Assembly: GCA_965285935.1 (NCBI GenBank)
Contig: OZ260662.1
Span: 104,098,001-104,162,000, forward strand
Source of the DNA: Ophelia neglecta
Taxonomy: Eukaryota
Length of the DNA stretch: 64,000 nucleotides
Reading direction: 5' to 3'
This document shows positions 15,997 through 64,000 of the stretch, one piece after another. The notes under the pieces were generated by a model. It saw only the letters and a list, made by a program, of their open reading frames with translations, had not been told where the DNA came from and searched no databases. Both the position numbers and the translations under genes were made by a program. Each line of letters opens with the position of its first letter. Position 1 is the stretch's first letter.

Positions 15997-16198
15997 NNNN
16001 NNNNNNNNNNNNNNNNNNNNNNNNNNNNNNNNNNNNNNNNNNNNNNNNNNNNNNNNNNNNNNNNNNNNNNNNNNNNNNNNNNNNNNNNNNNNNNNNNNNN
16101 NNNNNNNNNNNNNNNNNNNNNNNNNNNNNNNNNNNNNNNNNNNNNNNNNNNNNNNNNNNNNNNNNNNNNNNNNNNNNNNNNNNNNNNNNNNNNNNNNN
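15997..16198. other. Assembly gap (N run)
   Basis: 202 N. Confidence 0.99.
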
Positions 16199-17164
16199 AT
16201 CGCAGGCGTGGCAGCCACTTACGTGACAGGATGAATCATGTAAAACCTTTTGAGGTTTGTCCTTTAAGAATATAATAATTTGATTTTGCATATTTTCATG
16301 AGGCAATATGTTTCTAATAAACAATCAATTCTTGGTTAAAAAGAGTTCCACAGTGTACATGTACTTCAATTATAAGTTTATTCATCATATGACACATGTA
16401 CATTTCCAGAGCAATCAATAATAATAACATAAAATAAACAAAATTAAAATCTATAGAGAGCAGAGAAGCTAATTGATAATTATATTGTATGTCATAAAAT
16501 ACGGATTCCTTGTCATATAGGAACACAGTGAAGGCAGCAAAAGGCAAACAAAGAATATCAAAACGAATTAATAATTATTATCTCAACGCAAAATATACTA
16601 AATCTTCAACAGGTCTACAAGACTATTTGATCCCCGGCTGTTAAATCCACCGGACTACAAAACCTATGTAAATAAGTCCCCGGGGACGAAATGAATAACT
16701 TTGAGACCGGATACAAAATATACTAGATTCCTAGACCGCCGGACTTAAAATACTAGGATTTCAAAAAGCGGGACCCCTGGGTTTCGATTAATGTAAATAC
16801 ATGTAGTCAAGAGGGAACTTCCACGCAGGGTCGTATAAAAGTTGTACACCGGAATAATCAACAATTATCTTAAATGTTTCGTACACTGCTGAAGCTTACT
16901 TTCTAATAGGTAGCATGAATACTATTTGTATGAATATATATATAAATTCAATGCATGCCATCAAGTATAAAACTAATATTTGCTGCTTCCCTTAAACAAA
17001 TATATTAATTGTATAGAAAACAAGGAACGTCATACATAGGAACAAGACCATGATAGTCAGCAAATTAATTACTGGTCATTAGCAGTTAAATGCGCTTCTA
17101 TTATTGTAAGAGAGTTTTTCTAACATCACTTCTGTTTGAATCAAACCGATTGCTCCCACGGTGT

Positions 17165-17852
17165 CAGGAAAAGGCGAACGAGCTCAAGTCATGTCGCGGG
17201 CGAAAGACTCCCCATCTATGGTTGTACTTGTACTAGGAGTCCCGGAAAGGCGTGCGAGCTCAAGTCATGTCGTAGGGAAAAAGACTCCCCATCTATGGTT
17301 GTAAGTTTACAAGGAGTCCAGGAAAGGCGTGCGAGCTCAAGTCATGTCGTAGGGGAAAGACTCCCCATCTATGGTTGTAAGTTTACAAGGAGTCCAGGAA
17401 AGGCGTGCGAGCTCAAGTCATGTCGCGGGCGAAAGATTCCCCATCTATGGTTGTACGTTTACAAGGAGTCCAGGAAAGGCGTGCGAGCTCAAGTCATGTC
17501 GCGGGCGAAAGACTCCCCATCTATGGTTGTACTTGTACTAGGAGTCCCGGAAAGGCGTGCGAGCTCAAGTCATGTCGTAGGGAAAAAGACTCCCCATCTA
17601 TGGTTGTAAGTTTACAAGGAGTCCAGGAAAGGCGTGCGAGCTCAAGTCATGTCGTAGGGGAAAGACTCCCCATCTATGGTTGTAAGTTTACAAGGAGTCC
17701 AGGAAAGGCGTGCGAGCTCAAGTCATGTCGCGGGCGTAAGACTCCCCATCTATGGTTGTACGTTTACAAGGAGTCCAGGAAAGGCGTGCGAGCTCAAGTC
17801 ATCTCGTAGGGGAAAGACTCCCAATCTATGGTTGTACGTTCACAAGGAGTCC
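17165..17852. repeat. 76-77-bp tandem array, ~9 units, overlapping the last codons and 3' UTR of the ANK-ART gene
   Basis: GACTCCCCATCTATGGTTGT recurs at ~17206, 17283, 17359, 17435, 17511, 17588, 17664, 17740, 17816. Confidence 0.95.
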
Positions 17853-20800
17853 CACGAAGACAGTGACTCCTCTCCGCTTGGTGGTCCATTCCAACTCACT
17901 GTTAGGCAACATTGGGTCTATCTGACTTGTAGCTCCGATGGTCTGGTCACCGACATCATATGATCCCGGCATGATTCGCACTTGCAACGCTACACGCGCA
18001 TGGCGAATTATCTCGGTGGTTGGTTCAATGTACCTGCAATTGGGATATACGTCATTACCTGTGTTTAAGATGCAGTATGTATATACGCTTTGTTCTTGAT
18101 GAATTCCCACCAATTAATGGACTTTTCTTGGTAAATAAATTTTGCCTTTCCGGGTATCCATCCCCGTTTTATTATTAAAAATGGTTAGTTTGATGTGATG
18201 TACGTTTACCTACCCGTGTTTAGGGGCATATACCTCAAGTCCAGAATATCGGATTGACGGGGAAAGATAAATCTTGCTAACGTCATGATTTTGAGGTGGC
18301 TTCATGGCCGGATTGTCCTCATTATAATGGTTGATTAGCAGTCGGAGGCGGTCTCCTTCCGGTGTGTAGTCACCTGCAAGTGGAAGCGCCTCTTGTGACA
18401 AACATGTCAATGATTAATGATGCATTCTTCTTTAGGAATATTAATATACGTACCCTTAACTGATTAAGGGAATAATCGAATATGGTCATCCTTGAGTTCT
18501 CTTATTTCTTCTCATTAGTGGCACAAATTAAAGTGATTTAAATTATTCATGCCTGGCATTAGAAGTTCCCCGGTCTCTAGAATGTTCTTCACGCAGTCAA
18601 CTCGGGTCCCATGGAAAGCCACGTGCCATATTTCAAAGACCTTCTGGCTGGTTGCCTTCCCCGGTTGTACGCTGTGGCAAGTGATATCAAATATTAATTT
18701 GTTATCATTTATATAAGTTATAAGCTAATTTACAGTAATAAAACTATGGATTGATGACTGTGGGCCTGCGGTTGGCGGTTCCTGGGGATTGATGTTAGCA
18801 GGCCTGTAGTTGACGGTTCCCGGGGATTGATGCTTGTGGGCCTGCATTTGACGTTTCCTGGAGATTGATGTTTCTGGGCTTGCAGCTAACGATAATGATT
18901 CTGGTGGGCCTGCCGTTAACGTTTCCTAGGGATTGATGCCTGTAGGCCTGCAACAGACGGTTCTTGGGGATTGATGGATGTGGGCCTGCAGTTGACGGTT
19001 TTTGGGGATTGATGCCTGTAGGCCTGCAGTTGACGGTTTTTGGGGATTGATGCTTGTGGGCCTGCAGTTGACCGTTCTTTGGGATTGATGCTTCTTGGCC
19101 TGCATCTGACGGTTCTTGGGGATTGACGCTTGAGGGCCTGCATCTGCTTATGGGCCTTAAATAACCTTCGTAAACAGACCACCTGTATATTCAGACCTTG
19201 GGTGGTCTTAATTCAGAGGTTTCACTCTATTCGCGTTTAATGGTTTTCTTTGGCTGTCGGGCGTCCAATCCCTTTGCTGCTAGTATTTTGAGAATGCTAT
19301 CACACAGTTTATATACTAGTATTTATATATATACCTTTAATTAATGTCTGGATTTAAGCAACAGTTTATGTCTCAGCTATACTCACTGGAGACCAAACTT
19401 GACCCATCCTACCGGGAGAGCGTAGGGTTTGGGAGGTTGTCCACGGTCGTAGTACCGCTTGTGTCCTCGTTTACTGAGGCAGCTCTCACAGAAACACACG
19501 TCAAGTTTGGAATCAAAAAAATTATCTGGAAAAAAGCCCATTTGAATATGTATGAAGACAGTTGATAACAGCCCACTACATGTTTCAGGCAGACTCCAAA
19601 GTGACAATATCTCATACACGTCGTTATCGAAACCATTCCTTATTTAATAAACTAATAAATATGGAAATGAATAAATAGCCTTTATAACAAAAAAACAACA
19701 ACTAGAAATGCAAATGAAAATAATGTAATTTGATAACTAGTTGTATTTATCAAGAAATAACTTACCTGGCAAATGTAAGCTGTTCTTAAACTGTCGGCAT
19801 TTCCTGATATTTTCACACTCTTCTGTCTTCCTTTCGGCCAGGTAAAATTTAGCTTCTGTCTTCATTTCGGGCAGGTATTTAGAAACCCTGTGGATAAAGT
19901 TTTTCCCTTTCCCTCTCTTGGGATTGCGGTCCCCACTTCTTTCTAACATTTTGACAATATCTAAATAACCTTTTGATCTTGCTATATCGATTGGGGACTC
20001 ACCCTGGTCAGGAGAAGGATTGGCACCTCTCTCTAACAGAGCTTGAGCACACCCAATGTGGCCATTTCGACAAGCAATGCACAAAGGTGTCTCTCTTGTA
20101 CTTCCTCGACAATTTATGAAAGCCTCTTTTCTACCTAGCAAATGGCGGAGACTTGTTTCGTGACCTCCCATATAGGCGGCGCTTAGCGGGGTCAATCCTT
20201 CTTTACTAACGCTATTTACAGAGGCACCTTTTTCTAATAAAACTCGGCAACAATCGGCGCTTCCACTTGCGCTTGCGAGCAAAAGGGGGCTTTCCCCATA
20301 AACATTTATGGCATCAATAGAAGCACCGTGGGCAAGAAGTTTACGGCAGATGGCGACATCGCCTTTTGCGGCTGCGTTATGTAGAGGAGAAAAGCCATCG
20401 TTATCGCTTTTGTTAACGTTCGCAGCACGGGTCTCTAGCAGGAGACTGGTGCAATCAATGGAGCTGGAAAGATGAAGCGCTGTTCTGCCATCTCTGTCTG
20501 GTTTCTCAACAGAGGCTTTGTTCTGTATTAAAGTACGGCAACAAACCACATGACCGCTTGCAGAGGCTACGTGCAAGGGAGTCTGACCATGCCTTGCCAG
20601 AATATCATAAGAAGCAACATCTCCCTGTAAAATGGAGCTACAAGTTAAAAGACCGTTCATGCTATTTCGGTTGTGTGCGGTCAAACTACTATTGTCTTGG
20701 TAGTCAATATTTGCGCGGCTTTCTATCAAAACGAGACAGCAAGCGTTATGACCTCCGTAGGAAGCCGCGTGGAGGGGGGTAAGACCATTCTTGGTCTGGA

Positions 20801-22128
20801 TATCACACGAAGCCCCCTTCTCTAGTAACAGAGAACAGCACTTAAAATGGCCGTTCAAGCTTGCTTTGTAAAGAGGGGTCAATCCTTCGCTGTCTTTATT
20901 ATCAATAGGGGCGCCATTTTCTATCAAAACGCGGCAACAAGCAACATGGCCTCCGTCAGAAGCCACGTGGAGGGGGGTAAGACCATTCTTGGCCTGCATA
21001 TCACAAGAAGCCCCCTTCTCTAGTAACAGAGAACAGCAGTTAACATGGCCATTAAAACTAGCTCGGCAAAGAGGTGTCGACCCTTCTTTGTCTTGAGAAT
21101 CAAGGAGGGAGCCATGCTCTGTCAAAATGTGGCAACAGGCTATATGGCCTAGGTCGGAAGCTATGTGTAAGGCAGTACGACCTTTATGGTCTTGGATATG
21201 AACTGAGGCGCCGAGCTCTACCAAACGACTCACAACTGAAGAGTGGCCTCTTTGACAAGCGACCATCAACCCTGTCATTCCATCCGGGTCTTGGGTATTC
21301 ACATCTTCTGTGAGCAGAGCACATTCCAAACTCTCAAGGTCGTTTCTATGACATGCTTCGAGGATTCCCTGAAAAATCAAATTTGATTATGGAACTGGGC
21401 AGGCTTCTAGTTATTAGCCATAATCAGTAACTGATGTTTCATTCGATCCGCGGCTACTTGATCAAAATCAAACAAGGATAAGTATAGCGCAAGGCTTTTG
21501 ATTAAAAGCGGACGCGCGGAGCCCTGCGGAGGTAAATCCCGAAATTAGAACAGAGCATTAGACCTATTAAATATGTCCCTAACCCTTTCCCTAACTCCAG
21601 ATATAACCCTCAGCCCTAACCCTAGCCTTGCTGACAATTATTTTCTTCATGCCACTCAGAAATACCCATGGCCTCCGCTTCCGCATAGCTTCCGCACGTC
21701 CGCATTTAATCAAAAGCCTAGCGCAATGGACCGAAATTTTAAAACATCAATGAAGCCTGGCTTACAGGCACGCTTTTCTTAGTTCATTAGCATATTTATG
21801 AAGAATAGAAGACAGTTTAACAGGAAATTGATACTCGGCACGTTAATTATCTTCATAAACCTTACTTTCTGGGGTCGTTTTAAAAATTGCAGTAAACATT
21901 ACATTAAGTTCTCGAATATTGCTCAGATGCTGACAAACCTACCTTTCTATGGTCAGTAAACATTACATTAAGTTCTCGTATATTGCTCAGATTCTGCCAG
22001 GGTGGCCAATGCACTGATTCTGCCAAAACAATTCTGACTAGAACCTGGCTTAGGGCTGACAAACCTACCATTCTATAGTCTATCTGTTGTGGGCAGCGCT
22101 CCTGAATTATTTTGTCTGCGGACGACAT
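17826..22128 (-). CDS. Ankyrin-repeat + NEURL4-like ADP-ribosyltransferase domain protein, ~762 aa; coding exons 22128-22069, 21368-19766, 19525-19387, 18671-18553, 18373-18214, 18033-17826
   Basis: Phases fit (0,1,2,1,2); total 2289 nt with no internal stop. About 14-15 ankyrin repeats (GxTPLHxAxxxGH). C-terminus CRQFKNSLHLPDNFFD...CFCESC...RGQPPKPYALPVGWVKFGL...WHVAFHGT...ILETGELLMPGD...IYLSPSIRYS...ARVALQVRIMPGSY...IDPMLPNSELEWTTKRRG...GLLVNV follows the NEURL4 C-terminal ART domain motif by motif. In-frame TAA upstream of ATG 22128; acceptor at 22170/22169 implies a further 5' UTR exon. Confidence 0.9.
18748..19157. repeat. ~39-bp intronic minisatellite, ~10 units (GGGATTGATGCTTGTGGGCCTGCAGTTGACGGTT...)
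   Basis: Units read directly; lies in the intron 19386-18672 of the ANK-ART gene. Confidence 0.9.
21493..21718. mobile_element. MITE with ~30-bp TIRs, 8-bp TSD and internal CCCTAA-like repeats
   Basis: Left GGCTTTTGATTAAAAGCGGACGCGCGGAGC; right GCTTCCGCACGTCCGCATTTAATCAAAAGCC. TAGCGCAA at 21485-21492 and 21719-21726. Confidence 0.85.
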
Positions 22129-22487: not shown

Positions 22488-22736
22488 CATTCCCCGGTAA
22501 AAACCTGACCCGCGAGACCCTTGGGAATTTTGCCCCCCCCCCCCCTTCCTGAAATCCTGGATCCGGCGCTGTCACTGTGATTTTATTGTACCTCTATGAG
22601 GGATTTGAGAATTGGTAAATTTAAGCAAATTATTTTCTTTTTCGTTTTTGCAATGCACTCTCTTTCTTAAATTAATGAAATCATAATAAAAGGCTTTTCC
22701 TTGCACCGAAACCGTCAAAATAAGGCTGTTTTGTTA

Positions 22737-22951
22737 GAGGGGCGGATTCAGGGGGGGGGGGCACCGGGCCCGCCAAAAAAGTGGGCCTGGACCAGGGCCT
22801 ATTTCCGGACTCACGCAAGGTGGTTTCAAAGGGTTGGTAACGTGGACTATCCAGACATTTGCCAACTGTAGACATATTTGTTGGCAACAAATCATAGGTC
22901 AGCCTTGGGTATTTGCCCCCCCCCCCTCCTGAAATCCTGGATCCGCCACTG
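22737..22951. mobile_element. hAT-like MITE (CAG(T/G)GGCGGAT termini), inverted relative to 27422-27629; partial ends also at ~22535-22571 and ~27116
   Basis: Ends GAGGGGCGGATTC...GGATCCGCCACTG; the interior is the reverse complement of the 27422 copy. Confidence 0.75.
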
Positions 22952-39818: not shown

Positions 39819-42800
39819 TATATATAGCTTTTATTCCTCCACTTTCTGGAGAGTACATTTTTATCATGCAATACATAAATAGGCAGCTACATATGTGCAT
39901 TATATACAATCATATTTACAACGACCGCACCTCTGAGGTGTGCTATGTACATATATATTTACAATACATATTACTACGATAATATAAGGGGTATGAATCA
40001 GTGTACAGGGATTTACAGTTAGTTTACACCTCAACCTGTAGACCGTTACAGGAGCATTATCACTCAATATGACCTCTCAAACGGCGGCTGTACATTTCAT
40101 GGAGGGTATACAGGACTTGAGTTCAATAGGACCTGAGGTATGATTCACAGGTAAGTAAGACAGCACAAGGATCGTCATAGGGACCGATGTCAGTAATACA
40201 TTTCTCAAGGTAAGTAAAAATGTGCATTCTTTCATGTCTTAAGACCTCACATTTCAGCAGGAAGTGCTCCAGGTCATCACCCCGGCAACCGCAGAGCGGG
40301 CACCAATCGCCAGTAGACTCCAAGTATCTCCCGGAATGGGCATAGAGGACAGATGTTTTTGTGGCAAGCTTGAAAATAATCTGAGTTCCTTTTATTGCCC
40401 GCATATCTCGCGCACATCTCCACCACTCATTGCCTTTATAATTTGGCATCATCTGCCGATACACCTTAAGTTTTGAGCTCAGCACACATTCAACCTTCCA
40501 GGATTGTTCCAGGACACGGAGTGAGAGATTTCGAGCATGTGCCCTCCACTGTTCCTTCTTAGGGGTAATTCCTGTTCGTAACCATAACCAGAGCTCACGA
40601 AGGATTCCATACTTTGAGAATGTTTCGACCATAAGTCCGATGGGACTGTCAACCACAAACGTTCCTCGAACTGAGTATCTAGAGAGAGTCCTAATGGCCA
40701 ATGATCTGTAGATACAGTCGCAATCAAAGCTGAGCAAATCTCGCATAACTTTGAGTCTTTGTAAGTCCAGGAATGACTCTACTGTTCTCCATCCTATATT
40801 CGCCAAAACAGCCGCATTGCAGGTGTTAGGTGACAAGTTCTGTATAAGCCTGGAGAATCGTCTATGCTCCTTTTCCAGGCGCTCCAACTGCGCAGTTGTC
40901 AGGTTTACCAGTTCCAATCCATACAGAAATCCAGGTATTACAATAGACCAGTATAGTTTAGATAGTGTCCTGGTATTAAACAGACCATGGGACGTCCCAG
41001 CTGCCATGAGTGCGCACAGTGTCCGACTAGCCTTCTCTGCCCTCTGACGGAGGAGCGCCGACATGGCGTGTGATGAGACAGCAAGCGGGACACCTAGATG
41101 GACAGCACAGTCTTTCACAGGTATTTGTCCGGGCTCCAGAAAGCAAGCATGGCTTTCGAGGCTATCTTGCTTGGCTCCAAGACATAGCATCTCACATTTC
41201 TTAACGTTATACTTCAGGCGCCACTTGTTGCTGTATAAGCTGGCAATATCAAGCAGCTGCTGCATTCGGCTGTGGTCGATTGCGAGCAGGGAGACATCAT
41301 CCGCAAAACCCGGGCACGACATATCCATTCCTAGAACATGTGCTCCTAAATGACTCCTGGTTATCTCAACAAATAAATCATTGTAGAAAAGTAAAAACAA
41401 CAGCATCGAGAGCGGTCCTCCTTGGTGCAGTCCCTGTAATGTTTTAAACCAGCCGGATAGTCCGTTTCCAACTCTCACACAGCACATAAAGTCAGTATAC
41501 CAGTTTCGCATCAACCGGAGACTACCACCTCTTATTCCCATGTCGTACAGCTTGAAAAGTAGCCCGTTCACCCAGACACTATCAAACGCTTTCTGACAGT
41601 CTAACATAGCCACATACACTACATTATTTTCATCCAGCAGTTCGTATACTGTCTGTCGGAGCAAAAGGGCGGTGTGTTTGCTTGAGCAATTGCCCTGAGC
41701 TGCACCCTGAAGGCTGTTTATGAGGCATTTTTCCTTTGCAAAATCCTCGAGCCTCCGTCTCAAAAGACCTTCCATGACCTTACCCAAGACTGGTAATAAG
41801 CTGATCCTTCTATAGCTGTCTTTATTGCGGGGGTTTTTGTTTCCGCCTTTGAACACAGGTATCTCGATTGCCCTTTTAAACGCCCGTGGGATATGTTCCA
41901 ACTTCACAATTGCGTTATAGAGGGCAGTCAAAATTTCCATTGTTTTACCACCGCCATACTTTAGATGTTCTGCAGACATGTTGTCATATCCAGCTGCTTT
42001 TCCCATTTTTGCACGCTTGACGGTTGCCGTGGTTTCCTCTACTGTGAATGGCTTCCCGAATACTTCACACTCCTCGGGGTTATCCTCGGTAAGGTAAGTT
42101 TTCAGTTTTCTTTCAACACTGTCTTTAAATGCATCAACAAAGTTAGCATCCTGAGAAGGCGAGGTAAGTGTACGGAAATATTCACACCAATCTTCTTTAA
42201 TTTCATGAATGTCTGTGAGGAGGCGACCATCATCATTTTCGATCAGATTGACTTTGGATCCCACCCTCGGCTTACGTCTCTGGTTTACAAGTCGCCAGTA
42301 ATGGTCTTGTGTCAACTCGCCCGATTTGATAATTTCCTCCTGTTCCCGGTCGTCATGATCATGACAAGCTCTTCTCCTCTCCTTTCTATATTCTGATTTG
42401 GCCATTTTATAATTACGGTATAGTAGATTCATTGGGTCTCGTGGTCTGCCGGCTTCCACCCACTTTTGAAAATGCTCTTGTTGATGTTTCTTAGCTTTCT
42501 TTACACAATCATTCCAGTAGGGTTTTAACCATTTCCTATATTGTATTTTCGGAATAGATTTTTCTGCTTCAAGGGTTAGTATATTTGTTAGTTTTTCAAC
42601 ACAATCTTCAAGGTCTTGGCTTCTCAGTAGTTTGGGTGTAACGTGTCCTAAGTGTATATCAAAGTCACATTCTATTGCTTTTGCTACCTTGGATGTGTAA
42701 GTACGACTTATATCTTGGTCTGTGATCCCTCGCCAGTTCAGTCTAGTCAGGCCCACTTCCTCTACATGTAACATTTTCTCACACGTATTAGTACATATGT

Positions 42801-42845
42801 CAAGCAGCATGGGCAGATGATCAGATGTTATTTCAACTTCGTCCT
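39819..42845 (-). mobile_element. 5'-truncated non-LTR retrotransposon (end of APE + RT + C-terminal Cys/His knuckle), RTE-X/CR1-like (clade tentative), 9-bp TSD
   Basis: ORF part 42845-40123: SDHLP, YRRISLL, LDCQKAFDSV, QGLHQGGPLS, FADD, CPLC...HFLLKC. AATAAA + (TA)n tail. TSD CCTTATATA at 39810-39818 and 42846-42854. Empty sites at 8152-8160 and 52152-52160. Confidence 0.93.
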
Positions 42846-43377
42846 CCTTATATAATTGTAATATTGTATTGATAACCTTCGTGAATTTTCCGTTTACTTT
42901 TCCTGAACAGCCGCTTTTATCCCAGTGTCTGGTATATTCCAGGACGTCATAACCAAATTGCTTCATCGAATGTTTGTGACAGGCCCTTATGCAAAATGGC
43001 CGCCGCTGAAATGTTGCTAAGATGGGCCTTCTGCGTTCAAATATTAATATATATATATATATATATCTTTATTCCTCCATAAATGAAGAGTATGCTACAG
43101 TAAAGCAAACAAATATTCTGACTGCCACCAATATATAGGAGAAACATAACTATAAATAAATAAGGCCATACACACATTAAGAACACAAAAGCTGACCATA
43201 AACTTAAGTTAATAATACATAATAATATATAATAAAGCCTATTCTTTTTGTTTTGACATAAAAGGAGATATCAAGTAGTGCCACTACGGTATATAACTTA
43301 CTTCTGTATACTAATTTCTACTGTGCAGTCGTTCAGTTAGAGCTCTAGTCATGATCATTAATTTACTTTAATAGGAA

Positions 43378-46300
43378 TTATACTGTCCGTTTGAAACAGA
43401 GTGGTTTGCACACTGAGCAGTTCCAGATATGGCTAGAAATGTTCCGCCAAGACTTAATGTTCCAGTTCATAAATAGTTCATGCTCTTCCGCTGTAAACAT
43501 GGCTGAGCAGTCACCAAGACAATACCTCACTAGTTGCTCATCATCACAACTGTTTAACAGTACTTCGACCCACACTGGTAGGGAGCTAAGTCCGACCTCC
43601 CAGAATACTTCGCGTTCACAGCTGTATCGCGAACACGAGCACATCATGTGTACGAGCAAGTCACTGTACGGCCGTTGGCATAAATAGCATGTTCCCGGAA
43701 TATTCGCTGGGACCGTATACAGTTTTGCGAAGTCCATGACTGATTTCAATTGATTGATGTGGGTTCTTCCATAGGACCATATTCCGGCGTATTTAGTTCC
43801 TTCTTGAGTCTGGGAAACTCGTATATGTCTCCATCTTTCTAGGGTGGGCTCGTGTACGATTGTCGTTACACTCTCGTACTTCTTAATCACATCCTTTACT
43901 ATCTGAGACCATATGCGTCGTTCCGGGAAGTGCCCATTTTCCAGGAACTCAGTGATGTGGTCTTTTAAGTCATACTTCTCAAGACAATTGAAAACATCTG
44001 GAATGAAACCTGTCTGGTTTCCATTAACACCACTTCCCATTACAAATATCCACAGGCGAACAAGGAAAATCACTTTCGTCGTGGCTTTATGGTTCAACCT
44101 ACACAGTCGTCCGAAGAAGCGCAGCTTCTGGGCATCAAGATGCGAGTCAACGGAACTCCATCCCAGCATTCCAAGGGCTATTTCTGTTCTGGTAGTTGGG
44201 TGAAAATTTTGAATATTTTTTGCACATTTCCGGTGGCTTATTTCGAGCAGTTTTTTATCACTACCATTCAAACTGTTCCATAATTCACATCCATAGAAGG
44301 CACTAGCTCTCACCGTCGTATTGTAAATTTTGGACATTGTCGCCGGTGTCGCTCCAAGTCTTCGCATCATGGCCAATTGACTTTGCATTTTCAGCCCTGC
44401 TCGTTTCACACTCCCATCTAGATTGAAAGTGTCGTTCAATAGTACCCCTACGTGCACTTCTTCGCTCGACTGTGGTATTTCCACTCCATCCATTTCTAAC
44501 TTTGCCAATATCCTCTTCTTTTTTCCACTAAATATCATTAACTTGGACTTGGACGGGTTAAAAGTGAATCTCCATTTCCTTGAGTATCTGTCGCATAGGT
44601 CGACCATCCGTTGGAGATTATGGGGGCTATCTGCCATAAGCACAACATCGTCCGCTTGGGTTGGGCATCCAACAAAATGACCCTCTACCGACAAGCCAAA
44701 CCCCGATTTCTCCAGTTCCCATAACATGCCGTCATAGTGAGCCATGAAATACCATGGACCCCACACCGAACCCTGAAACACAGACTGTAGTATCGGGAAT
44801 TCTCCCGACGGAACTCCGTTCAACAGTACTTGATTTCGTCTACTCGAATAAGAGTCAACTACTAGTCTCCAGTACTTTCCACGAACACCAAGCTTATGAA
44901 GCTTCGAAAACAAGCCCTGATGCCAAACGGAGTCAAACGCCGTAGCAGAGTCCAACATACACGTGTAGACGGAGGATCCCCTTTCTGTGAAGTGTCTGAT
45001 GCTCTCTTGGAGCGTGAAAGACGTCATTAAGCTACAGTGTTTTTCCTGGTAAGCGTTTTGCAGGGGGTGTGGAAAGTTTAAATTATGTTTCTGTGTCCAA
45101 TTTATAAATCGTTGTAGAGTGACCCTCTCCCATAGCTTATAAACTACTGGCAGGAGAGTTATCCCCCTGTGATTTTTCCGATCATCGCTGTGTTTGCGCG
45201 AGCCTTTAAACACGGGAATGATTTGTCCTAACTTCATATTATTTGGCGTTTTTCCGGTGTCATACATTGTGTTGAACAGCCTACACAACACTGTCACTAG
45301 TGCTGCTCCGGCATACTTCAAGTGTTCGTTTTGTAAGCCGTCGTGACCAGGTGCCTTCCCTCTTTTGAGCTTCCATATTGCTTGCCTGACTTCTTCCTCA
45401 TTTAACGGCTCTCCCAAAATCGGATCGTCTTCTGTTTCAGTTAGCGTATGTAAAGCTTCAAACTCTCTTGCTACATGATCTTCATTATCTTTCCTAAATT
45501 TCGGATTATCCTTCGGGGTGTAAAGTTCTGCAAAATGCTCTCTCCATGCTATGGCCATATCCTCTGCGTCTCTTATCACCTTTTCACCAATTCTGAGTTC
45601 ATTCACTATTTTCCCAGCCTGTTTTTGACTACTTTTCAGTAGGCAATATAACTTCTTTTGGTCTGTTTCCGCTGCTACTTCAATTTCCGTTTCTACATCA
45701 TATCTCATTTTGTTTTCACACTGGCGTCTCAGGAGTCTGTATTTGCGTTTTTCATTTTTATACGCGACATACGAGGCGAACTGCTGACCTCGAGGTCGTC
45801 CTTCTGAGTCCCAAGTCTTCTTGGCAGCCCTCATCTTGTCCTGAATATCCGGAAGACCACTTCCCCGCCAGTATGGCTTGGTAATAGAATATGGTCTAGT
45901 AATTGGCAATGAACACTTCGCGGCTTTGTAAAGAGAGTCTACTATTTGTTTGTACAGCCTCTTGGTCAATTCTTCGTCCGCTCCATTAAGTTGATTGATA
46001 TTTATCTGAGTGATAAGTTCATTTGCTTTTGCTCCATAAGAAGAATAAATTTCCTGCACAGACAGTCTATTCCAGGCATATCTCACAGAAAGCTTTACTG
46101 GCTGCACTTTAGAGATTGGTTCAGTCTTCATTATAACTATAACTGGATTGTGGTCGCTTACATTCATACAATGTTCAGACGTAACCTGACAGTTCGTAAT
46201 AGTGTCCATCTTAGTTTTGCTAATGAGAATGTGGTCTATTATGCTCTGAAATTCACAGTTAGCACCTTGACTAAATGTGTAGGTTGGTCCGGAACATTGG

Positions 46301-46890
46301 TTCACAACTGCCAGGGACAGAAAGTCATTTCTTTGAACGAATCTTTCTAGTTCACTGTCCCTATGATTGCCTGAGCGGACACGACTCCTGTGTCCATTGA
46401 GCTGAGCGTTTAAATCACCCATGATTATGACTTCACTGTATGCTTGATATTCTAAGGTGAGTATTTCAAGTTCATTTAATGCCTCATTAAACTGAGCACT
46501 CCCAGCATTTGACGAGGGAAGGTATGCCGACAACAAGGTAAGACACGTATTTCGGGTAAGACACAATTGTACACCAATAATTCGATCACTTGATGGTAAA
46601 CGCCTTATATTGCTTGATAATTCTTTCTTCCACATTATGGCCACCCCACCTTTCCCACGTTTATATGGGTCAACAATGTTTAGGTCATCGTCTGAAATTC
46701 CAAAGGATTCATAATGTTCATGGATGCTGGCTAGAAAGTCTACTCCATTGGGAAATAGCCAATGTTCTGATATTGACAATATGTCTATATTGGCTGTATT
46801 CAATAGATGGAGCATGTAAGGCGCGTTACGCATGGCCCCCTGACAATTAAAAGTGGCCAGGGTTAATTCAGTTCTATTTATTATAGCCAT
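43378..46890 (-). CDS. LINE ORF2: apurinic-type endonuclease + reverse transcriptase, 1170 aa
   Basis: APE motifs TFNCQG, ISEHW, GKGGVAI, MGDLNA, IDHI, SDHNP; RT motifs HRGITLL, LDSATAFDSV, QGSVWGP, QADD; C-terminal CYLC...HMMCSC. Confidence 0.95.
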   Translation of the reverse strand: MAIINRTELTLATFNCQGAMRNAPYMLHLLNTANIDILSISEHWLFPNGVDFLASIHEHYESFGISDDDLNIVDPYKRGKGGVAIMWKKELSSNIRRLPSSDRIIGVQLCLTRNTCLTLLSAYLPSSNAGSAQFNEALNELEILTLEYQAYSEVIIMGDLNAQLNGHRSRVRSGNHRDSELERFVQRNDFLSLAVVNQCSGPTYTFSQGANCEFQSIIDHILISKTKMDTITNCQVTSEHCMNVSDHNPVIVIMKTEPISKVQPVKLSVRYAWNRLSVQEIYSSYGAKANELITQININQLNGADEELTKRLYKQIVDSLYKAAKCSLPITRPYSITKPYWRGSGLPDIQDKMRAAKKTWDSEGRPRGQQFASYVAYKNEKRKYRLLRRQCENKMRYDVETEIEVAAETDQKKLYCLLKSSQKQAGKIVNELRIGEKVIRDAEDMAIAWREHFAELYTPKDNPKFRKDNEDHVAREFEALHTLTETEDDPILGEPLNEEEVRQAIWKLKRGKAPGHDGLQNEHLKYAGAALVTVLCRLFNTMYDTGKTPNNMKLGQIIPVFKGSRKHSDDRKNHRGITLLPVVYKLWERVTLQRFINWTQKHNLNFPHPLQNAYQEKHCSLMTSFTLQESIRHFTERGSSVYTCMLDSATAFDSVWHQGLFSKLHKLGVRGKYWRLVVDSYSSRRNQVLLNGVPSGEFPILQSVFQGSVWGPWYFMAHYDGMLWELEKSGFGLSVEGHFVGCPTQADDVVLMADSPHNLQRMVDLCDRYSRKWRFTFNPSKSKLMIFSGKKKRILAKLEMDGVEIPQSSEEVHVGVLLNDTFNLDGSVKRAGLKMQSQLAMMRRLGATPATMSKIYNTTVRASAFYGCELWNSLNGSDKKLLEISHRKCAKNIQNFHPTTRTEIALGMLGWSSVDSHLDAQKLRFFGRLCRLNHKATTKVIFLVRLWIFVMGSGVNGNQTGFIPDVFNCLEKYDLKDHITEFLENGHFPERRIWSQIVKDVIKKYESVTTIVHEPTLERWRHIRVSQTQEGTKYAGIWSYGRTHINQLKSVMDFAKLYTVPANIPGTCYLCQRPYSDLLVHMMCSCSRYSCEREVFWEVGLSSLPVWVEVLLNSCDDEQLVRYCLGDCSAMFTAEEHELFMNWNIKSWRNISSHIWNCSVCKPLCFKRTV

Positions 46891-46893
46891 GTC

Positions 46894-48798
46894 TTAATAG
46901 TCCAACCACTTCCTCGCGTAGGTGTCGCCCGGCCAAAAGTTCTCTTGGCACATGGAGAATCCGAGGGACCTGGACACCTCCATTATACTGGCCTGCCGTT
47001 GTGATCTGTTGCTAAGGAACAGCTTTATGCTTCCCTCCTTTGCTACCACACCTTTTTGGCGTAGATAGTCAACAAACTCCCTTTCCCCGAGTTTTCTATC
47101 TATGTTTCCTACATATAATTTTATTGTCTCTGTTCCTATGTTGGTCTCTCCAACCCATGATGGGATATGTTTCTCTTCTCCTGGGATAAGTTTGTTCCCC
47201 GCAGTCGAACGAGTACTATGATAAATTTGTGTGCCGGTTGTAGGCCTATATCTCGTTTTGTCTGGTCGCGGTGTTTTCGGAGAGTCATACGTTTCCGTGC
47301 TTGAGGTGGAATCTGCCTGCCCGTCGAGCTCATGGCCATTGGCTGCTTTTTCCGTCGGTCTCTCATGTAAATGTCCCGCGGACATGGGGCTGGCACGAGG
47401 CGGTACGAGTCGAGTCTGTGCAATGAAAAGCTGTTGATTCCATAACATAGTATTGACAGTCTGACAAAACTGTTGATTTTGTTTTGTTAAAGAGTCATGA
47501 GTTTTGCTTTTATGTTCCTCTAGGCAGGCAGCGAGATGCTCCACACGGTTGATGGCATCCTTGCGGTTCTCTTCGCATACAGTTGGGCAAAGTTCTGACC
47601 GGGGGGATTTACTGTGACACTGTGTGCTTTTGGGCTCGCCAGTGTCTTGTGGCGCGTTTTGCATCAATTCTTTCATATGTTCTCGTAGGGTCTTGATGGT
47701 GATGGAATTTTCCTTACATAGTTTTGAGAGTGAAGCTACCTTTGTGTCTCCCAAGTTATTGTTAATTTTCTTTTTGAAATCCCCATGTGAATTTATTGTT
47801 CTTTGAACTTCGAATGAGGTCTCATCTTGTTTTAGTTTAAGGCTGGTCAGTGTAGAATTTGCCTCATTGAAATGGCCTCTGAGCGCGAGTAGTTTTTCTG
47901 CGTTCTCCACTAATGTTTCTGTATTTCCTTTAATTCTATTTTGGGTATCACATTTGAGTAATTGGATCTCATTTCTCAGTTCCTTAATAACACGTTCTTG
48001 TGTGTTGCCCGTTTGCTTTGCTTTATCGAGTCTTTCGATAAATTCTTTTCTCAGTTCCTTGATAATACTTTCTTGTGTGTTACTGTTCTGCATAGATTTA
48101 TCCAGCTTTTCGGAAATCTCAGTTTTTTCTCTTTCGAGTTCTTTAACTGTAACCATGAGGCTGGTCAGCTTTACTCCAAAAATTCCCATTTGGTCCGTGA
48201 TCATTTGCAGTTCCAGGCTCCTGTGTCTAGGCATTGCAGAGTATGTATCCTGGGATTGAGAGCTTGGTTTACTTGGGGTATTCTGGGATGATTCATCAAT
48301 TCCCGGCCGGGCCGTTACAACATCTCGCAAAACATCGGGCGACTCACCTTTGATAAAACTCAGCAGTTTAAAACTGTCTCTGGCTAACTTTACTCCTATT
48401 GAGTCGCCCTTGCGGGTTTTCGGTTGCTTTCGCCGTACTAGGGTACCAAGGGGACAGTTACTAATTTGTTGTGCCTTCTCATACAAATCCCGTCTAATCA
48501 GTCCTAGTTCTTGGTCCGTCGTAGCTTTCTCTATCAGAGTTACTATAAAATTGTCCTGCGGAAGCCCATCGACGTCAAACTGGTACTTGTCAAATGTGCC
48601 AGTGGCTTGCGACGCCTGCGAGAATTCCACTTCTGTTACTTCAAGCGGGTCACCCGTGAGATTGTTTTCATAGTTGTTAACCCATGATTGTTGGCCGCAT
48701 GTAATACCAGAGAACTCCTTAAAACTGTCATTTGCTATTTCCAGGGCCGAAAACAGGGATTTTGACAGGGGCTCCATGGGGTAATTCGCTACTTCCAT
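46894..48798 (-). CDS. LINE ORF1: coiled-coil + C-terminal RRM-like domain, 634 aa
   Basis: Directly upstream of ORF2; long heptad region with an internal repeat (NTQESIIKELR / NTQERVIKELR); C-terminal IKLYVGNI...FWPGDTYARKW. Confidence 0.85.
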   Translation of the reverse strand: MEVANYPMEPLSKSLFSALEIANDSFKEFSGITCGQQSWVNNYENNLTGDPLEVTEVEFSQASQATGTFDKYQFDVDGLPQDNFIVTLIEKATTDQELGLIRRDLYEKAQQISNCPLGTLVRRKQPKTRKGDSIGVKLARDSFKLLSFIKGESPDVLRDVVTARPGIDESSQNTPSKPSSQSQDTYSAMPRHRSLELQMITDQMGIFGVKLTSLMVTVKELEREKTEISEKLDKSMQNSNTQESIIKELRKEFIERLDKAKQTGNTQERVIKELRNEIQLLKCDTQNRIKGNTETLVENAEKLLALRGHFNEANSTLTSLKLKQDETSFEVQRTINSHGDFKKKINNNLGDTKVASLSKLCKENSITIKTLREHMKELMQNAPQDTGEPKSTQCHSKSPRSELCPTVCEENRKDAINRVEHLAACLEEHKSKTHDSLTKQNQQFCQTVNTMLWNQQLFIAQTRLVPPRASPMSAGHLHERPTEKAANGHELDGQADSTSSTETYDSPKTPRPDKTRYRPTTGTQIYHSTRSTAGNKLIPGEEKHIPSWVGETNIGTETIKLYVGNIDRKLGEREFVDYLRQKGVVAKEGSIKLFLSNRSQRQASIMEVSRSLGFSMCQENFWPGDTYARKWLDY

Positions 48799-61770: not shown

Positions 61771-64000
61771 TTAACTTTTTGAACTTTTATTCACTCAGGA
61801 ACTCCGTGTGGAGTATGGAGTACAAAAATTATAAATTATTTTCCATAAACAGCACATAAATACAGTTCTTAATTAAGAGAAGTTTGTCATTACAACACCT
61901 GATTTTCTGATAAACACTGCTATTTTTACCATACATTTACGATTTTGTAACAGTGATCCGAGTTTATACAGACTCGGTCTAGATCTATAATAGTTTGGGA
62001 TGTATCTTGTACGAAGAGCTTTGATATCTGGAGAGTCGCATTCGAAAAATAAATGGTACTCATCCCCCAACTTTTCACTATTACATAAATTACAGTACCT
62101 CAGATATCTAGGTGTAACAATTCTGCTATGTCTGCCAGTTTCAACAGGGAGTTTATGGTTGCTCAATCTAAATTTACACAGTACTGTTCGAAGGTTTTCG
62201 GGTAAATCAATTAGATATTGTTCAAACTGTAGTTGTTGTTTAAATGAACGGTAAAATGTACACAAATCTTTAGTAGCAATTTCATTACACCAATTCTGTG
62301 TAAAATGGTCTTGTAAAGTACGCTCAACTTTCATTTTTAACCATTTTGTATTTATGTCGTTATGATTCATATTAAAAAGATTACTATTTCCAGTAGAGTC
62401 TAACACATTTTTTACACTGTTGAGCCAAGGGCATTTGTATGTATTATCAATAAAACACGTCATTAATAATTGACAAAGTTTGTAGCATAGTTTGTTAGTG
62501 TTTCCAGTGATCAGCTTTCCCCAGAAAGCCGCCATTCTACTTTTAACGAGGATATCTAGTGGGTACCGCCCCAGTTCGCCATACACCATACCATTATATG
62601 TGCTCTTTCTGACTTTTAGTACACGTTTACAGAAACCAAGATGCGCTGTTTCTATTACTGTATTGTTGCCTCCACCCCAAATCTCACAGCCAAAAGTAAG
62701 AATAGGTACAATGGTTCTGTCATATAATTCCATGATAACATCAATGGGTAAGTTTAGTACATTTGCTCGGCTGAGAAGGCTAAAAGATGCTTTTCTGGCC
62801 TGTTCAACAAGATGTTTCTTGCATAGGTCTACATTTCCATTGTGCTTAATAACAATGCCCAGGTATTTAAAACTATACACTATTTCAACAGTTTTGCCTT
62901 CATAGTAAAATTCAACATTACTGGTCTTTCTTCTACTAAAAATTAACACTTTGGTTTTCTCTACATTGACATTAAGTTTCCATTTTTGACAATAACCTTC
63001 AAGGTCTTTTAATCCTTTCTGGAGATTTTGGGAACTATTGGCAATTAAGACAGTATCATCGGCATACATGATAATGAGAAATTTAAGAGCGTATTCTAGT
63101 TCGAGCACAAAACCATCATTTGACTTGGTTTCTAACGTACTTTCTAGATCATTAACATACAATGAAAATAATATCGGGGACAAGTTTTCACCTTGTCTTA
63201 CACCTACAAGGCTGCTGAAATATTCAGAGCATTTACCATTTACAAGCAGGCACGACTTAATGTTATAATACAGACTTCTAATAGTTTTCATAATTTTAGT
63301 GTCGCAACATATACCTTGGCTGTCAATTTTGTACCAGAGCCCCTCCCTCCAAACAGTGTCAAAGGCCTTCTGGTAATCTACGAAGGCACAAAACATTTTT
63401 TTCTTTGACTTGAGAGAATAGTTTACAAGACAGTAGAGCAACAGAGAATGGTCAAGAGTCCCATAACCACGCCTAAAGCCGGCCTGATTTTCACTAAGAA
63501 GTTGATTAGCTTCGACAAAGTTTGACAAACGTTCATTAAGAAGCGACGTGAAAAGTTTACCAATACACGACAATAAAGTGATACCTCTGTAGTTATTCGG
63601 TTCACTAGTACTACCTTTATTTTTATAAATTGGGACAATTAAGCCAATAGACCAATTTTCCAACACTGTCCCCTCGTCGAGAATACGATTAAACAGTGCT
63701 TTATAAAGAGGGAGCATTTTGATTTTTGTACTTTTTAAGAATTCGTTAATAATGAAGTCACAACCACTGGATTTACCAGTTTTCAGCTTGTCAATACCTT
63801 TGGCTATCTCCTGTAAGTCAAACTGTCTATTAAGTATATCGTCATTCAACATTGGGTGGCTATGGTCTATGGTTACATCAGTGTCGCCTGTATTTATGGT
63901 CTCTACATTATTTAGTTATTTAAAATGTTTAAACAGATCAGCAAAGTTCGCCTTTATATCACCCATCTTCTTATTATTTATGAGGTTCCAGTACATTTTG
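61771..64000 (-). mobile_element. Non-LTR retrotransposon (RT region, RTE-X-like), extends beyond the window; nonsense codon at 63918-63916
   Basis: ORF 63852-61873: NYRGITLLS, VDYQKAFDTV, GVRQGENLSP, YADD, FRLSNHKLPVETGRH, CNLC...HLFFEC. Upstream in-frame KMYWNLIN...HFK*LNN. The 3' end abuts host CTCTTCAATACA (empty site at ~6451-6462). Confidence 0.93.

What the first reader, a model, noticed from the sequence alone, without database searches (positions are those of the whole stretch)
17826..22128. Ankyrin-array + NEURL4-type ADP-ribosyltransferase fusion: a tankyrase-like layout built from a non-PARP ART
Seen: the 547-aa ankyrin ORF is only one exon. Splicing to four small downstream exons adds a domain matching the NEURL4 C-terminal ART throughout (CxCESC, RGxPPxxYALPxGW, WHxAxHG, LSPS..Y, AxVAxQVxxxPGSY, DP...ELEW.TK..G). 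Known: NEURL4 places this ART after NHR repeats, while tankyrases place ankyrin clusters before SAM and a PARP domain. Here there is no NHR, no SAM and no PARP-type signature. Inference: a lineage-specific, ankyrin-targeted ADP-ribosylating enzyme made by domain shuffling, possibly an intracellular sensor-effector in innate immunity. I do not know a characterised protein with this architecture.
Basis: partly seen in the sequence, partly recalled or inferred. Interest (0 to 1): 0.9.

Follow-up and report, generated by a model that had tools for sequence, protein, structure and literature searches.

The report
Ankyrin array fused to NEURL4-type ADP-ribosyltransferase
An invertebrate-type gene joins about 14 ankyrin repeats to an apparently intact PARP-like ADP-ribosyltransferase domain of the NEURL4 family; the fusion is real, but it is one more of at least a dozen partner combinations this domain forms, not a unique invention.

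Summary
On the minus strand, one large exon (21368-19766) encodes about 14 ankyrin repeats. Four small exons (19525-19387, 18671-18553, 18373-18214, 18033-17826) together encode one ~210-aa domain. Of 2035 six-frame segments in the window, only these four hit a family profile, in order and covering it end to end (E 2e-24 to 4e-10).

The domain is the C-terminal ART domain of NEURL4 and its paralogues. The window keeps the family residue at 36 of 40 strongly conserved columns, including HGT, YLSPSIRY and ELEW.

The fusion does not rest on splice prediction alone. The last 17 codons of the ankyrin exon already encode the conserved C-x5-C-xxFKxSLxL start of the domain.

A natural proxy homologue folds with pLDDT 94, and its best PDB matches are all PARP catalytic domains.

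The ART family is promiscuous: it is also joined to NHR/SPRY, ARM, LRR, ZU5, kinase, SH2, WWE, ZZ, actin, Mib-SH3 and a conflict-type glycosyltransferase. One ankyrin+ART protein already exists in a protist transcriptome. No ankyrin+ART was found among about 100 animal family members.

An immune role, expression and catalysis are untested. One intron has a GC donor. The joined model was deliberately not built.

The parts
22069..22128 (-). Putative first coding exon (ATG, 20 codons, phase 0, donor GTAGGT). Unverified.
   Evidence: Read from the sequence. It joins in frame to the strong acceptor at 21370-21369. No homology support.
19766..21368 (-). Large exon: ankyrin array, short basic linker and the first part of the ART domain. 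Ends in phase 1 with donor GTAAGT.
19935..21368 (-). About 14 ankyrin repeats (N-cap, 11 clean cores, one degenerate repeat near residue 228, and two C-terminal repeats). Contains a 198-bp (two-repeat) tandem duplication at 20720-21161.
   Evidence: Pfam Ank_2 E=1.8e-98. Motif count. TRF. Closest solved structures are ankyrin-1/2.
19767..19817 (-). Start of the NEURL4-type domain inside the ankyrin exon: C-x5-C-xxFKxSLxLP (CENIRKCRQFKNSLHLP).
   Evidence: Aligns to the nearly invariant C25, C31 and L38 columns that precede FFD..CYCxxC in 11 homologues (A3).
19387..19525 (-). ART exon B: FFD, CFCESC, RGQPPKPYALPVGW. Donor GTGAGT, phase 2.
   Evidence: HMM E=2.7e-19, model positions 6-54.
18553..18671 (-). 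ART exon C: WHVAFHGT (motif I, the NAD-binding His), ILETGELLMP. Donor is GC (18552-18551), phase 1.
   Evidence: HMM E=4.3e-15, model positions 55-102. The L001 relative has a GT donor at the same position and phase.
18214..18373 (-). ART exon D: variable loop plus IYLSPSIRYSG (motif II). Donor GTAGGT, phase 2.
   Evidence: HMM E=4e-10, model positions 85-142.
17826..18033 (-). ART exon E: ARVALQVRIMPGSY, DP..NSELEWTTKRRG (motif III, the catalytic Glu), the native C-terminus GLLVNVQP, and the stop.
   Evidence: HMM E=2.3e-24, model positions 134-210. The family ends with GLLVKxE at the protein C-terminus.
17165..17852 (.). 76-bp satellite (9 copies, 91% matches). Its first unit overlaps the last 27 nt of the CDS and the stop codon.
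   Evidence: TRF; sequence.

Best explanation
This is a real, apparently intact, intron-containing animal gene of about 762 codons. Its product is a cytosolic-type protein. It has no signal-peptide-like start and no transmembrane-type domain hit.

The protein has three parts. The N-terminus is a continuous solenoid of about 14 ankyrin repeats. A basic linker of about 40 aa follows. The C-terminus is a complete NEURL4-family, PARP-like ADP-ribosyltransferase domain. That domain begins with a Cys-rich knuckle: C-x5-C, then C-x-C-x2-C.

Proposed mechanism (inferred). The ankyrin solenoid recruits a protein partner or substrate. The ART domain binds NAD+ through the His of HGT and the YLSPS..Y segment. 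It then uses the Glu of ELEW to transfer ADP-ribose to the recruited protein or to itself, as shown biochemically for the human NEURL4 C-terminal domain.

Evolutionary origin (inferred). The gene arose by exon or domain shuffling within a family whose four-exon ART cassette is repeatedly placed behind different recognition modules.

What is shown: the gene structure, the homology, motif conservation, and the ART fold of the family. What is inferred: splicing in vivo, catalysis, the targeting role of the ankyrin array, and any biological role.
For: Structure and frame:
- Exons and phases are consistent, and the CDS sums to 2289 nt with no internal stop.

Homology:
- Exon E matches 321 representatives, the best at E=8e-23.
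- All four exons match collinearly and adjacently in about 25 long proteins. In Ptychodera 'neuralized-like protein 4' (P0203) they fall at 798-841, 844-880, 887-927 and 931-997.
- The family includes true NEURL4 orthologues of 1430-1645 aa with NHR repeats.
- Only these four window segments hit the family HMM, and they cover it fully.

Conservation:
- 36 of 40 columns conserved at >=85% carry the family residue. The other three scored columns show D->H, R->K and F->Y.
- The fortieth column is the Gly at the split codon of the exon C/D junction, which the DNA also specifies.

Fusion:
- The end of the ankyrin exon aligns to the conserved start of the domain (A3). ANK and ART therefore share one exon.

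Intron conservation:
- The four intron positions and phases that bound exons B-E are identical in the closest relative locus, L001.

Fold:
- AlphaFold2 of the natural proxy P0203:789-997, with a 70-row alignment, gives pLDDT 94.1 and pTM 0.90.
- Foldseek against the PDB returns only PARP1/2/4/16 catalytic domains at the top (E about 1e-4, probability 1.00).

Biochemistry from the literature:
- The human NEURL4 C-terminal domain ADP-ribosylates in vitro. The HGS->AGA and ELEW->ALAA mutations abolish this (PMC8932523, read).
Against: - There is no transcript evidence.
- The donor after exon C is GC rather than GT.
- A 76-bp satellite abuts and overlaps the stop codon. The first downstream AATAAA on this strand lies 1.45 kb away.
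- The neighbourhood is rich in LINEs.
- No orthologue was found, so purifying selection could not be measured.
- Foldseek TM-scores to PARPs are only about 0.4.
- The fold test was run on a homologue that is 44-66% identical to the window exons, not on the window's own joined domain.
- The PARylation and localisation claims for NEURL4 rest on a single study.
Confidence: 0.7

Rival explanations
1. Recently formed or decaying gene. The ANK-ART fusion is a young shuffling product that is unexpressed or mis-spliced, so it makes no functional enzyme.
For: - GC donor at 18552-18551, where the L001 relative has GT.
- The satellite overlaps the 3' end of the CDS.
- No orthologue or identical protein is present in 5.8 or 1.84 billion sequences.
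- LINE-rich surroundings.
- Exon 1 is unsupported.
Against: - There are no stops or frameshifts across 2289 nt.
- 36 of 40 conserved family columns are retained, including all catalytic motifs.
- GC-AG introns are a normal minority class (established knowledge). This one keeps CAG|GC.
- The junction restores the conserved LLMPGD sequence.
- The C-terminus matches the family's native end.
Confidence: 0.15
2. The protein is made, but the ART domain acts as a pseudoenzyme: an NAD+/ADP-ribose binder or a scaffold, not a transferase.
For: - Several PARP-like domains (TASOR, LRRC9, PARP13) are inactive (PMC7955679, PMC10450202).
- PMC7955679 lists NEURL4 activity as 'not determined', with an H-L-E rather than H-Y-E triad.
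- The structural match to PARPs is only moderate (TM about 0.4).
Against: - His, the motif II segment and the invariant Glu-Trp are all kept. Inactive relatives typically lose the His or the Glu.
- In vitro activity of the human NEURL4 domain depends on exactly these motifs (PMC8932523).
Confidence: 0.12
3. Two separate genes. The ankyrin ORF ends at 19737 and the ART exons belong to another transcript.
For: The ORF runs on for 9 codons past the proposed donor to a stop at 19737. There is no RNA evidence.
Against: - The last 17 codons before the donor encode the conserved C-x5-C-xxFKxSLxL start of the ART domain. The next conserved block (FFD..CxCxxC) begins exactly at the acceptor 19525, in the right phase.
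- The L001 relative has an intron at the same position and phase.
- No other domain partner lies anywhere in the window.
Confidence: 0.03

Closest known systems
NEURL4 (neuralized-like protein 4) C-terminal ART domain. Predicted by de Souza & Aravind 2012; activity reported by Cardamone et al. 2022 (PMC8932523).
   Same: - Homologous over the whole ~210-aa domain.
- Same Cys-rich start.
- Same HG[ST], [FYL]xSPSxxY and ExEW motifs.
- Same position at the extreme C-terminus.
- PARP-like fold by modelling.
   Different: - There are no NHR (neuralized homology) repeats. The N-terminal partner is an ankyrin solenoid.
- The protein is about half the length of NEURL4 orthologues (762 versus 1430-1645 aa).
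- It is a paralogue in a shuffled subfamily, not an orthologue of NEURL4.
Uncharacterised NEURL4-ART paralogues of marine invertebrates. Examples: Ptychodera flava XP_070553384 (SPRY+NHR+ARM+ART), Branchiostoma LRR+ZU5+ART, SH2+ARM+ART, Mib-SH3+ARM+ART, GT4-conflict+ART.
   Same: - Same ART cassette (about 45-68% identity per exon for the closest named ones, lower for others) at the C-terminus, behind a recognition or adaptor module.
- In the closest locus, L001, the same four-exon structure.
   Different: None of the ~100 animal members examined carries ankyrin repeats.
Gefionella okellyi EP00698_P012571 (P0178), a 428-aa protein from a protist transcriptome.
   Same: Same two-part layout: N-terminal ankyrin repeats, then a C-terminal NEURL4-type ART with intact motifs.
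   Different: - Only 4-5 ankyrin repeats.
- The organism is a malawimonad protist, so the layout is probably an independent fusion.
- About 40-55% identity in the ART domain.
- Uncharacterised.
Tankyrase 1/2 (PARP5a/b)
   Same: An ankyrin repeat region N-terminal to a catalytic domain of the H-Y-E, PARP-like fold class. The logic of ankyrin-recruited ADP-ribosylation is the same.
   Different: - No SAM domain, and no Pfam PARP domain.
- The ankyrin part is closest to ankyrin-1/2, not to tankyrase ARCs.
- The catalytic domain belongs to a different family.

Membership tests
NEURL4-type ART domain family | Significant sequence homology across the whole C-terminal ~210-aa domain of NEURL4 orthologues and paralogues. 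| tested here: met
   phmmer of exon E: 321 hits, best E=8e-23. The four exons match collinearly in about 25 proteins. The family HMM is covered at positions 6-210 by the four exons. The domain start aligns at the end of the ankyrin exon.
NEURL4-type ART domain family | Catalytic motifs H-G-[ST], [FYL]-x-S-P-S..Y and E-x-E-W (the H-[YL]-E triad). | tested here: met
   WHVAFHGT, IYLSPSIRY and NSELEWTTK are present. H73, G74, S126, P127, Y131, E190 and W191 all carry the family residue.
NEURL4-type ART domain family | PARP-like (ARTD-type) ADP-ribosyltransferase fold. | tested here: inconclusive
   Met for the natural proxy P0203:789-997: pLDDT 94.1, and top PDB matches are PARP1/2/4/16 catalytic domains, E about 1e-4. 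The window's own joined domain was not folded, because the joined step was left out by rule. TM-scores are about 0.4.
NEURL4-type ART domain family | NAD+-dependent ADP-ribosyl transfer. | not testable with these tools
   Needs biochemistry. Reported for human NEURL4 only (PMC8932523).
NEURL4 orthologue (whole protein) | Multiple N-terminal neuralized homology repeats (NHR, PF07177). | tested here: not met
   No Neuralized or SPRY hit in the ankyrin ORF. tblastn of NHR-bearing relatives against the whole window matches only the ART exons.
Tankyrase (PARP5) | PARP catalytic domain (PF00644). | tested here: not met
   No Pfam PARP hit on any exon at E<=1, nor on 29 full-length or mid-length family members at E<=1e-4.
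Tankyrase (PARP5) | SAM domain between the ankyrin region and the catalytic domain. | tested here: not met
   No SAM hit. Only about 40 aa of basic linker separate the last ankyrin repeat from the Cys-rich start of the ART domain.
Tankyrase (PARP5) | Ankyrin repeats organised as ARC substrate-binding clusters. | tested here: inconclusive
   Ankyrin repeats are present. The closest solved relatives are ankyrin-1/2 (E=2e-158), with tankyrase-1 at E=1e-41. ARC-specific features were not examined.

The most novel reading that the evidence does not exclude
The NEURL4-type ART is the shared executioner domain of a large, so far undescribed family of invertebrate intracellular sensor-effector proteins. 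Interchangeable recognition modules feed one ADP-ribosylating output. These modules include ankyrin (as here), LRR, ZU5, NHR/SPRY, ARM, SH2, kinase and a conflict-type glycosyltransferase. On this reading the window's gene is the ankyrin-guided member, a functional analogue of tankyrase that evolved independently from a different ART family.
Probability: 0.2. Interest if true: 0.75.

Novelty: new variant of a known kind. Interest (0 to 1): 0.42.

Why it matters
NEURL4 is the least understood of the PARP-like transferases. Its activity, targets and localisation rest on a single study. A compact ankyrin+ART protein would be an easier object than the 1560-aa NEURL4 for testing what this domain does. 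It could also show whether a recruiting module sets the domain's targets, which would parallel tankyrase.

More broadly, the searches show that the ART cassette is shuffled behind many recognition modules and is multiplied in hemichordates, amphioxus, brachiopods and corals. That pattern resembles lineage-specific immune or conflict gene families, and I could not find it described in the held literature. The single gene in this window is one instance of that pattern, not a surprise in itself.

Tried and rejected
- Ankyrin ORF as a query against 5.8 billion proteins. It was swamped by generic ankyrin proteins (best 29-37% identity). No orthologue and no self-hit were found, so the species stays unknown.
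- Pfam on the single ART exons. No hit; the family has no Pfam model.
- PDB sequence-profile search with the family alignment. Nothing below E=0.2.
- ART-region searches with P0203 and P0130. They returned 41 and 59 proteins, none with ankyrin repeats.
- A paralogue in the window. None.
- NHR, LRR, ZU5, kinase, SH2 and ARM exons near the gene. None.
- Upstream ORFs from 22.1 to 34.7 kb. Nothing gene-like.
- Rfam and tRNA scans, run to look for clues to the organism. Empty.
- Bacterial and archaeal genome scan. The second, with A4, found one locus. It is an intron-flanked, coral-like last exon on a 2.3-kb contig filed under a Phycisphaerales MAG, so it is contamination, not a bacterial homologue.
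- Literature searches for described invertebrate expansions or ankyrin fusions of this domain. Nothing was found. The two Aravind papers that first described the family are not held, so I cannot say which architectures they listed.
- Rejected idea: that the C-terminus is an artefact of the satellite. The family ends with the same GLLVKxx motif.
Full report
**Scope and rules kept.** I analysed the spliced model exon by exon, always by reference. The fold test was therefore done on a natural homologue. The two N runs (15997-16198 and 34786-35327) were left untouched. Neither the window nor the fetched loci (L001, L002) looked human. The best matches of the ART exons are marine invertebrates and protists at 40-69% identity.

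**1. The observation.**

The minus-strand ORF 19737-21380 (547 aa) is an ankyrin array. Pfam gives Ank_2 at E=1.8e-98. I counted 11 clean repeat cores plus degenerate and capping repeats, about 14 in all.

From the DNA, the ankyrin exon opens at a strong acceptor (ttgatttttcag|G, exon start 21368). It closes at CCAG|GTAAGT (exon end 19766, phase 1).

Four small exons follow:

| Exon | Coordinates | Junction | Phase |
|---|---|---|---|
| B | 19525-19387 | donor GTGAGT | 2 |
| C | 18671-18553 | donor GCATGA | 1 |
| D | 18373-18214 | donor GTAGGT | 2 |
| E | 18033-17826 | ends with the stop | - |

A possible first exon lies at 22128-22069 (ATG, 20 codons, donor GTAGGT). With it, the lengths sum to 2289 nt, which is 762 codons plus the stop.

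**2. Is it more than chance?**

phmmer with exon E alone, against 1.84 billion representatives, gave 321 hits at E<=1e-3. The best was 8e-23.

BLASTP of the four exons against those hits shows them matching side by side and in order in about 25 long proteins. In Ptychodera flava 'neuralized-like protein 4' (P0203), exon B falls at 798-841, C at 844-880, D at 887-927 and E at 931-997.

I built a profile from 66 family domains without the window rows and searched all 2035 six-frame segments of the window. It hit only these four:
- E=2.7e-19, model positions 6-54
- E=4.3e-15, model positions 55-102
- E=4e-10, model positions 85-142
- E=2.3e-24, model positions 134-210

Together they cover the model end to end.

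Of 40 columns conserved at 85% or more, the window has the family residue at 36. Three others differ (D->H, R->K, F->Y). The last one is the Gly of the split codon at the C/D junction, which the DNA also encodes.

**3. The fusion is physical, not only predicted.**

The last 17 codons of the ankyrin exon (CENIRKCRQFKNSLHLP, 19817-19767) align to the nearly invariant C-x5-C-xRFKxSLxL block. That block immediately precedes FFD..CYCxxC in eleven homologues from six phyla (A3). The ART domain therefore begins on the same exon as the ankyrin repeats and continues at the acceptor 19525 in the correct phase. This all but excludes the two-gene reading.

**4. Conserved gene structure.**

The closest relative I could find is L001, a 32-kb ENA contig. 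Its identity to exons B, C, D and E is 51-53%, 61-67%, 63-67% and 64-66% respectively. It carries two ART genes, both split into the same four exons. In the plus-strand copy, read base by base, introns lie at the same positions and phases, including the one before exon B.

At the position of the window's GC donor, L001 has a canonical GT. The GC junction in the window restores the family's LLMPGD sequence. No alternative GT donor keeps both the frame and the conserved residues. I read it as a GC-AG intron, but it is also the weakest point of the model.

L001 has no ankyrin match. Upstream of its ART exons are Cul7/CPH and ZZ hits.

**5. What the domain is.**

Region searches with two natural family members returned 41 and 59 proteins. 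They include clear NEURL4 orthologues: 1430-1645 aa with NHR and SPRY, from Branchiostoma, Haliotis, Octopus, Pecten, Pinctada and insects. They also include many shorter paralogues.

The literature gives the following:
- An ART domain was predicted in the NEURL4 C-terminus (de Souza & Aravind 2012, cited in PMC8932523).
- It was described as a family distinct from PARPs (PMC3417536).
- PMC7955679 lists its triad as H-L-E: HGS, LLS, ELE.
- The human domain ADP-ribosylates in vitro. HGS->AGA plus ELEW->ALAA abolishes this (PMC8932523).
- Suskiewicz et al. call it PARP-like but not a PARP family member (PMC10450202).

The window has HGT, YLS(PS) and ELEW.

**6. Fold.**

No solved structure is detectable by sequence.

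AlphaFold2 of P0203:789-997, with a 70-row alignment that included the four window exons as separate rows, gave mean pLDDT 94.1 and pTM 0.90.

Foldseek against the PDB returned PARP1, PARP2, PARP4 and PARP16 catalytic domains as all top matches (E about 1e-4, probability 1.00, TM about 0.4).

In the model the three motifs sit where an ART fold expects them:
- HGT is at the end of a strand (69-75), followed by a helix (77-86).
- The SPS..Y segment follows a strand (123-126).
- E-x-E-W opens a strand (190-193).

**7. Architectures.**

Pfam scans of 29 family members, plus precomputed domains for about 80 more, show the same C-terminal ART behind many partners:
- NHR, with or without SPRY and ARM
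- LRR
- ZU5
- LRR+ZU5
- protein kinase
- thioredoxin+kinase
- kinase+TPR+NHR
- SH2+ARM
- Mib-SH3 repeats, with or without ARM
- actin
- ZZ+NHR
- WWE (Euglena)
- a 'GT4-conflict' glycosyltransferase
- tandem ART-ART

Several species hold many copies. At least nine distinct Ptychodera flava proteins lie on one 50.6-Mb record. Branchiostoma species have about twenty, and Lingula about eight.

Ankyrin+ART appeared once: P0178 from the malawimonad Gefionella okellyi, with 4-5 repeats. None of the animal members examined has ankyrin repeats.

In the window itself there are no NHR, LRR, ZU5, kinase, SH2 or ARM exons, and no paralogue.

**8. The ankyrin part.**

Its closest solved relatives are the 24-repeat membrane-binding solenoids of ankyrin-1/2 (E=2e-158). 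Tankyrase-1 ARCs come far lower (E=1e-41).

The exon contains a 198-bp (two-repeat) tandem duplication at 81% identity, so the array has grown recently. There is no SAM domain. The linker is about 40 basic residues.

**9. Mechanism and rivals.**

Best reading (confidence 0.7): an intact gene for an ankyrin-guided, NEURL4-type, PARP-like ADP-ribosyltransferase made by domain shuffling.

Rivals:
- A young or decaying, unexpressed gene (0.15). The arguments for it are the GC donor, the satellite on the stop codon, the missing orthologue and the LINE-rich setting.
- A pseudoenzyme (0.12).
- Two separate genes (0.03).

An innate-immune role is suggested only by analogy. The partner modules and the copy-number expansions resemble immune or conflict gene families. 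Nothing here tests it.

**10. Verdict.**

The catalytic domain family is known. This layout is uncharacterised and, so far, unseen in animals. The family is so promiscuous in its partners that one more partner is a modest surprise. I rate it a new variant of a known kind, interest about 0.4. The broader pattern of shuffled, expanded NEURL4-type ART genes in marine invertebrates is the more interesting lead.

Noticed in passing
window 17165-17852: 76-bp satellite (9 copies, 91% matches). Its first unit includes the last 27 nt of the CDS and the stop, so the repeat seems to have grown out of the gene's 3' end. The first AATAAA on the gene's strand after the stop is at 16377-16382, just before an N run.
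   Followed up: partly
window 18763-19146: 38-bp minisatellite (about 10 copies, 75-84% matches) inside the intron between ART exons B and C.
   Followed up: no
window 20720-21161: 198-bp tandem duplication (2.2 copies, 81% matches) inside the ankyrin exon. It equals two ankyrin repeats, so the array expanded recently.
   Followed up: no
window 18551-18552: The intron after ART exon C has a GC donor. The closest relative (L001) has GT at the same position and phase.
   Followed up: yes
window 40123-48798 and 61873-63852 (minus strand): Non-LTR retrotransposon ORFs: 43378-46890 (endonuclease + reverse transcriptase), 46894-48798 (no Pfam hit, possibly ORF1), 40123-42966 (RT) and 61873-63852 (RT).
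   Followed up: partly
window ~22520-22570, ~22905-22950, ~23370-23400, 27301-27694: Dispersed repeat with a long G run (ggatccaggatttcagga-Gn-caaa) and related ORF fragments (GPEIGPGPGPLF). Probably a short mobile element.
   Followed up: no
L001 1-1090 (minus) and 8900-10260 (plus): Two NEURL4-type ART genes on one ENA contig. Cul7/CPH and ZZ domain hits lie upstream of them. These are HERC2-type modules, which is notable because NEURL4 is a known HERC2 partner.
   Followed up: partly
L002 1212-1487: A coral-like ART last exon, flanked by stop codons, on a 2.3-kb contig filed under a Phycisphaerales bacterium MAG. Most likely eukaryotic contamination of the bin.
   Followed up: yes
P0184 (Euglena gracilis); P0145, P0152: WWE (a poly-ADP-ribose-binding domain) fused to the NEURL4-type ART in Euglena, and proteins with two ART domains in tandem. 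Both fit an ADP-ribosylation role for the family.
   Followed up: no
window 15997-16198 and 34786-35327: N runs (202 and 542 bases). Left as they are. ORFs listed across the second one (34754-35406) are artefacts of the Ns.
   Followed up: no
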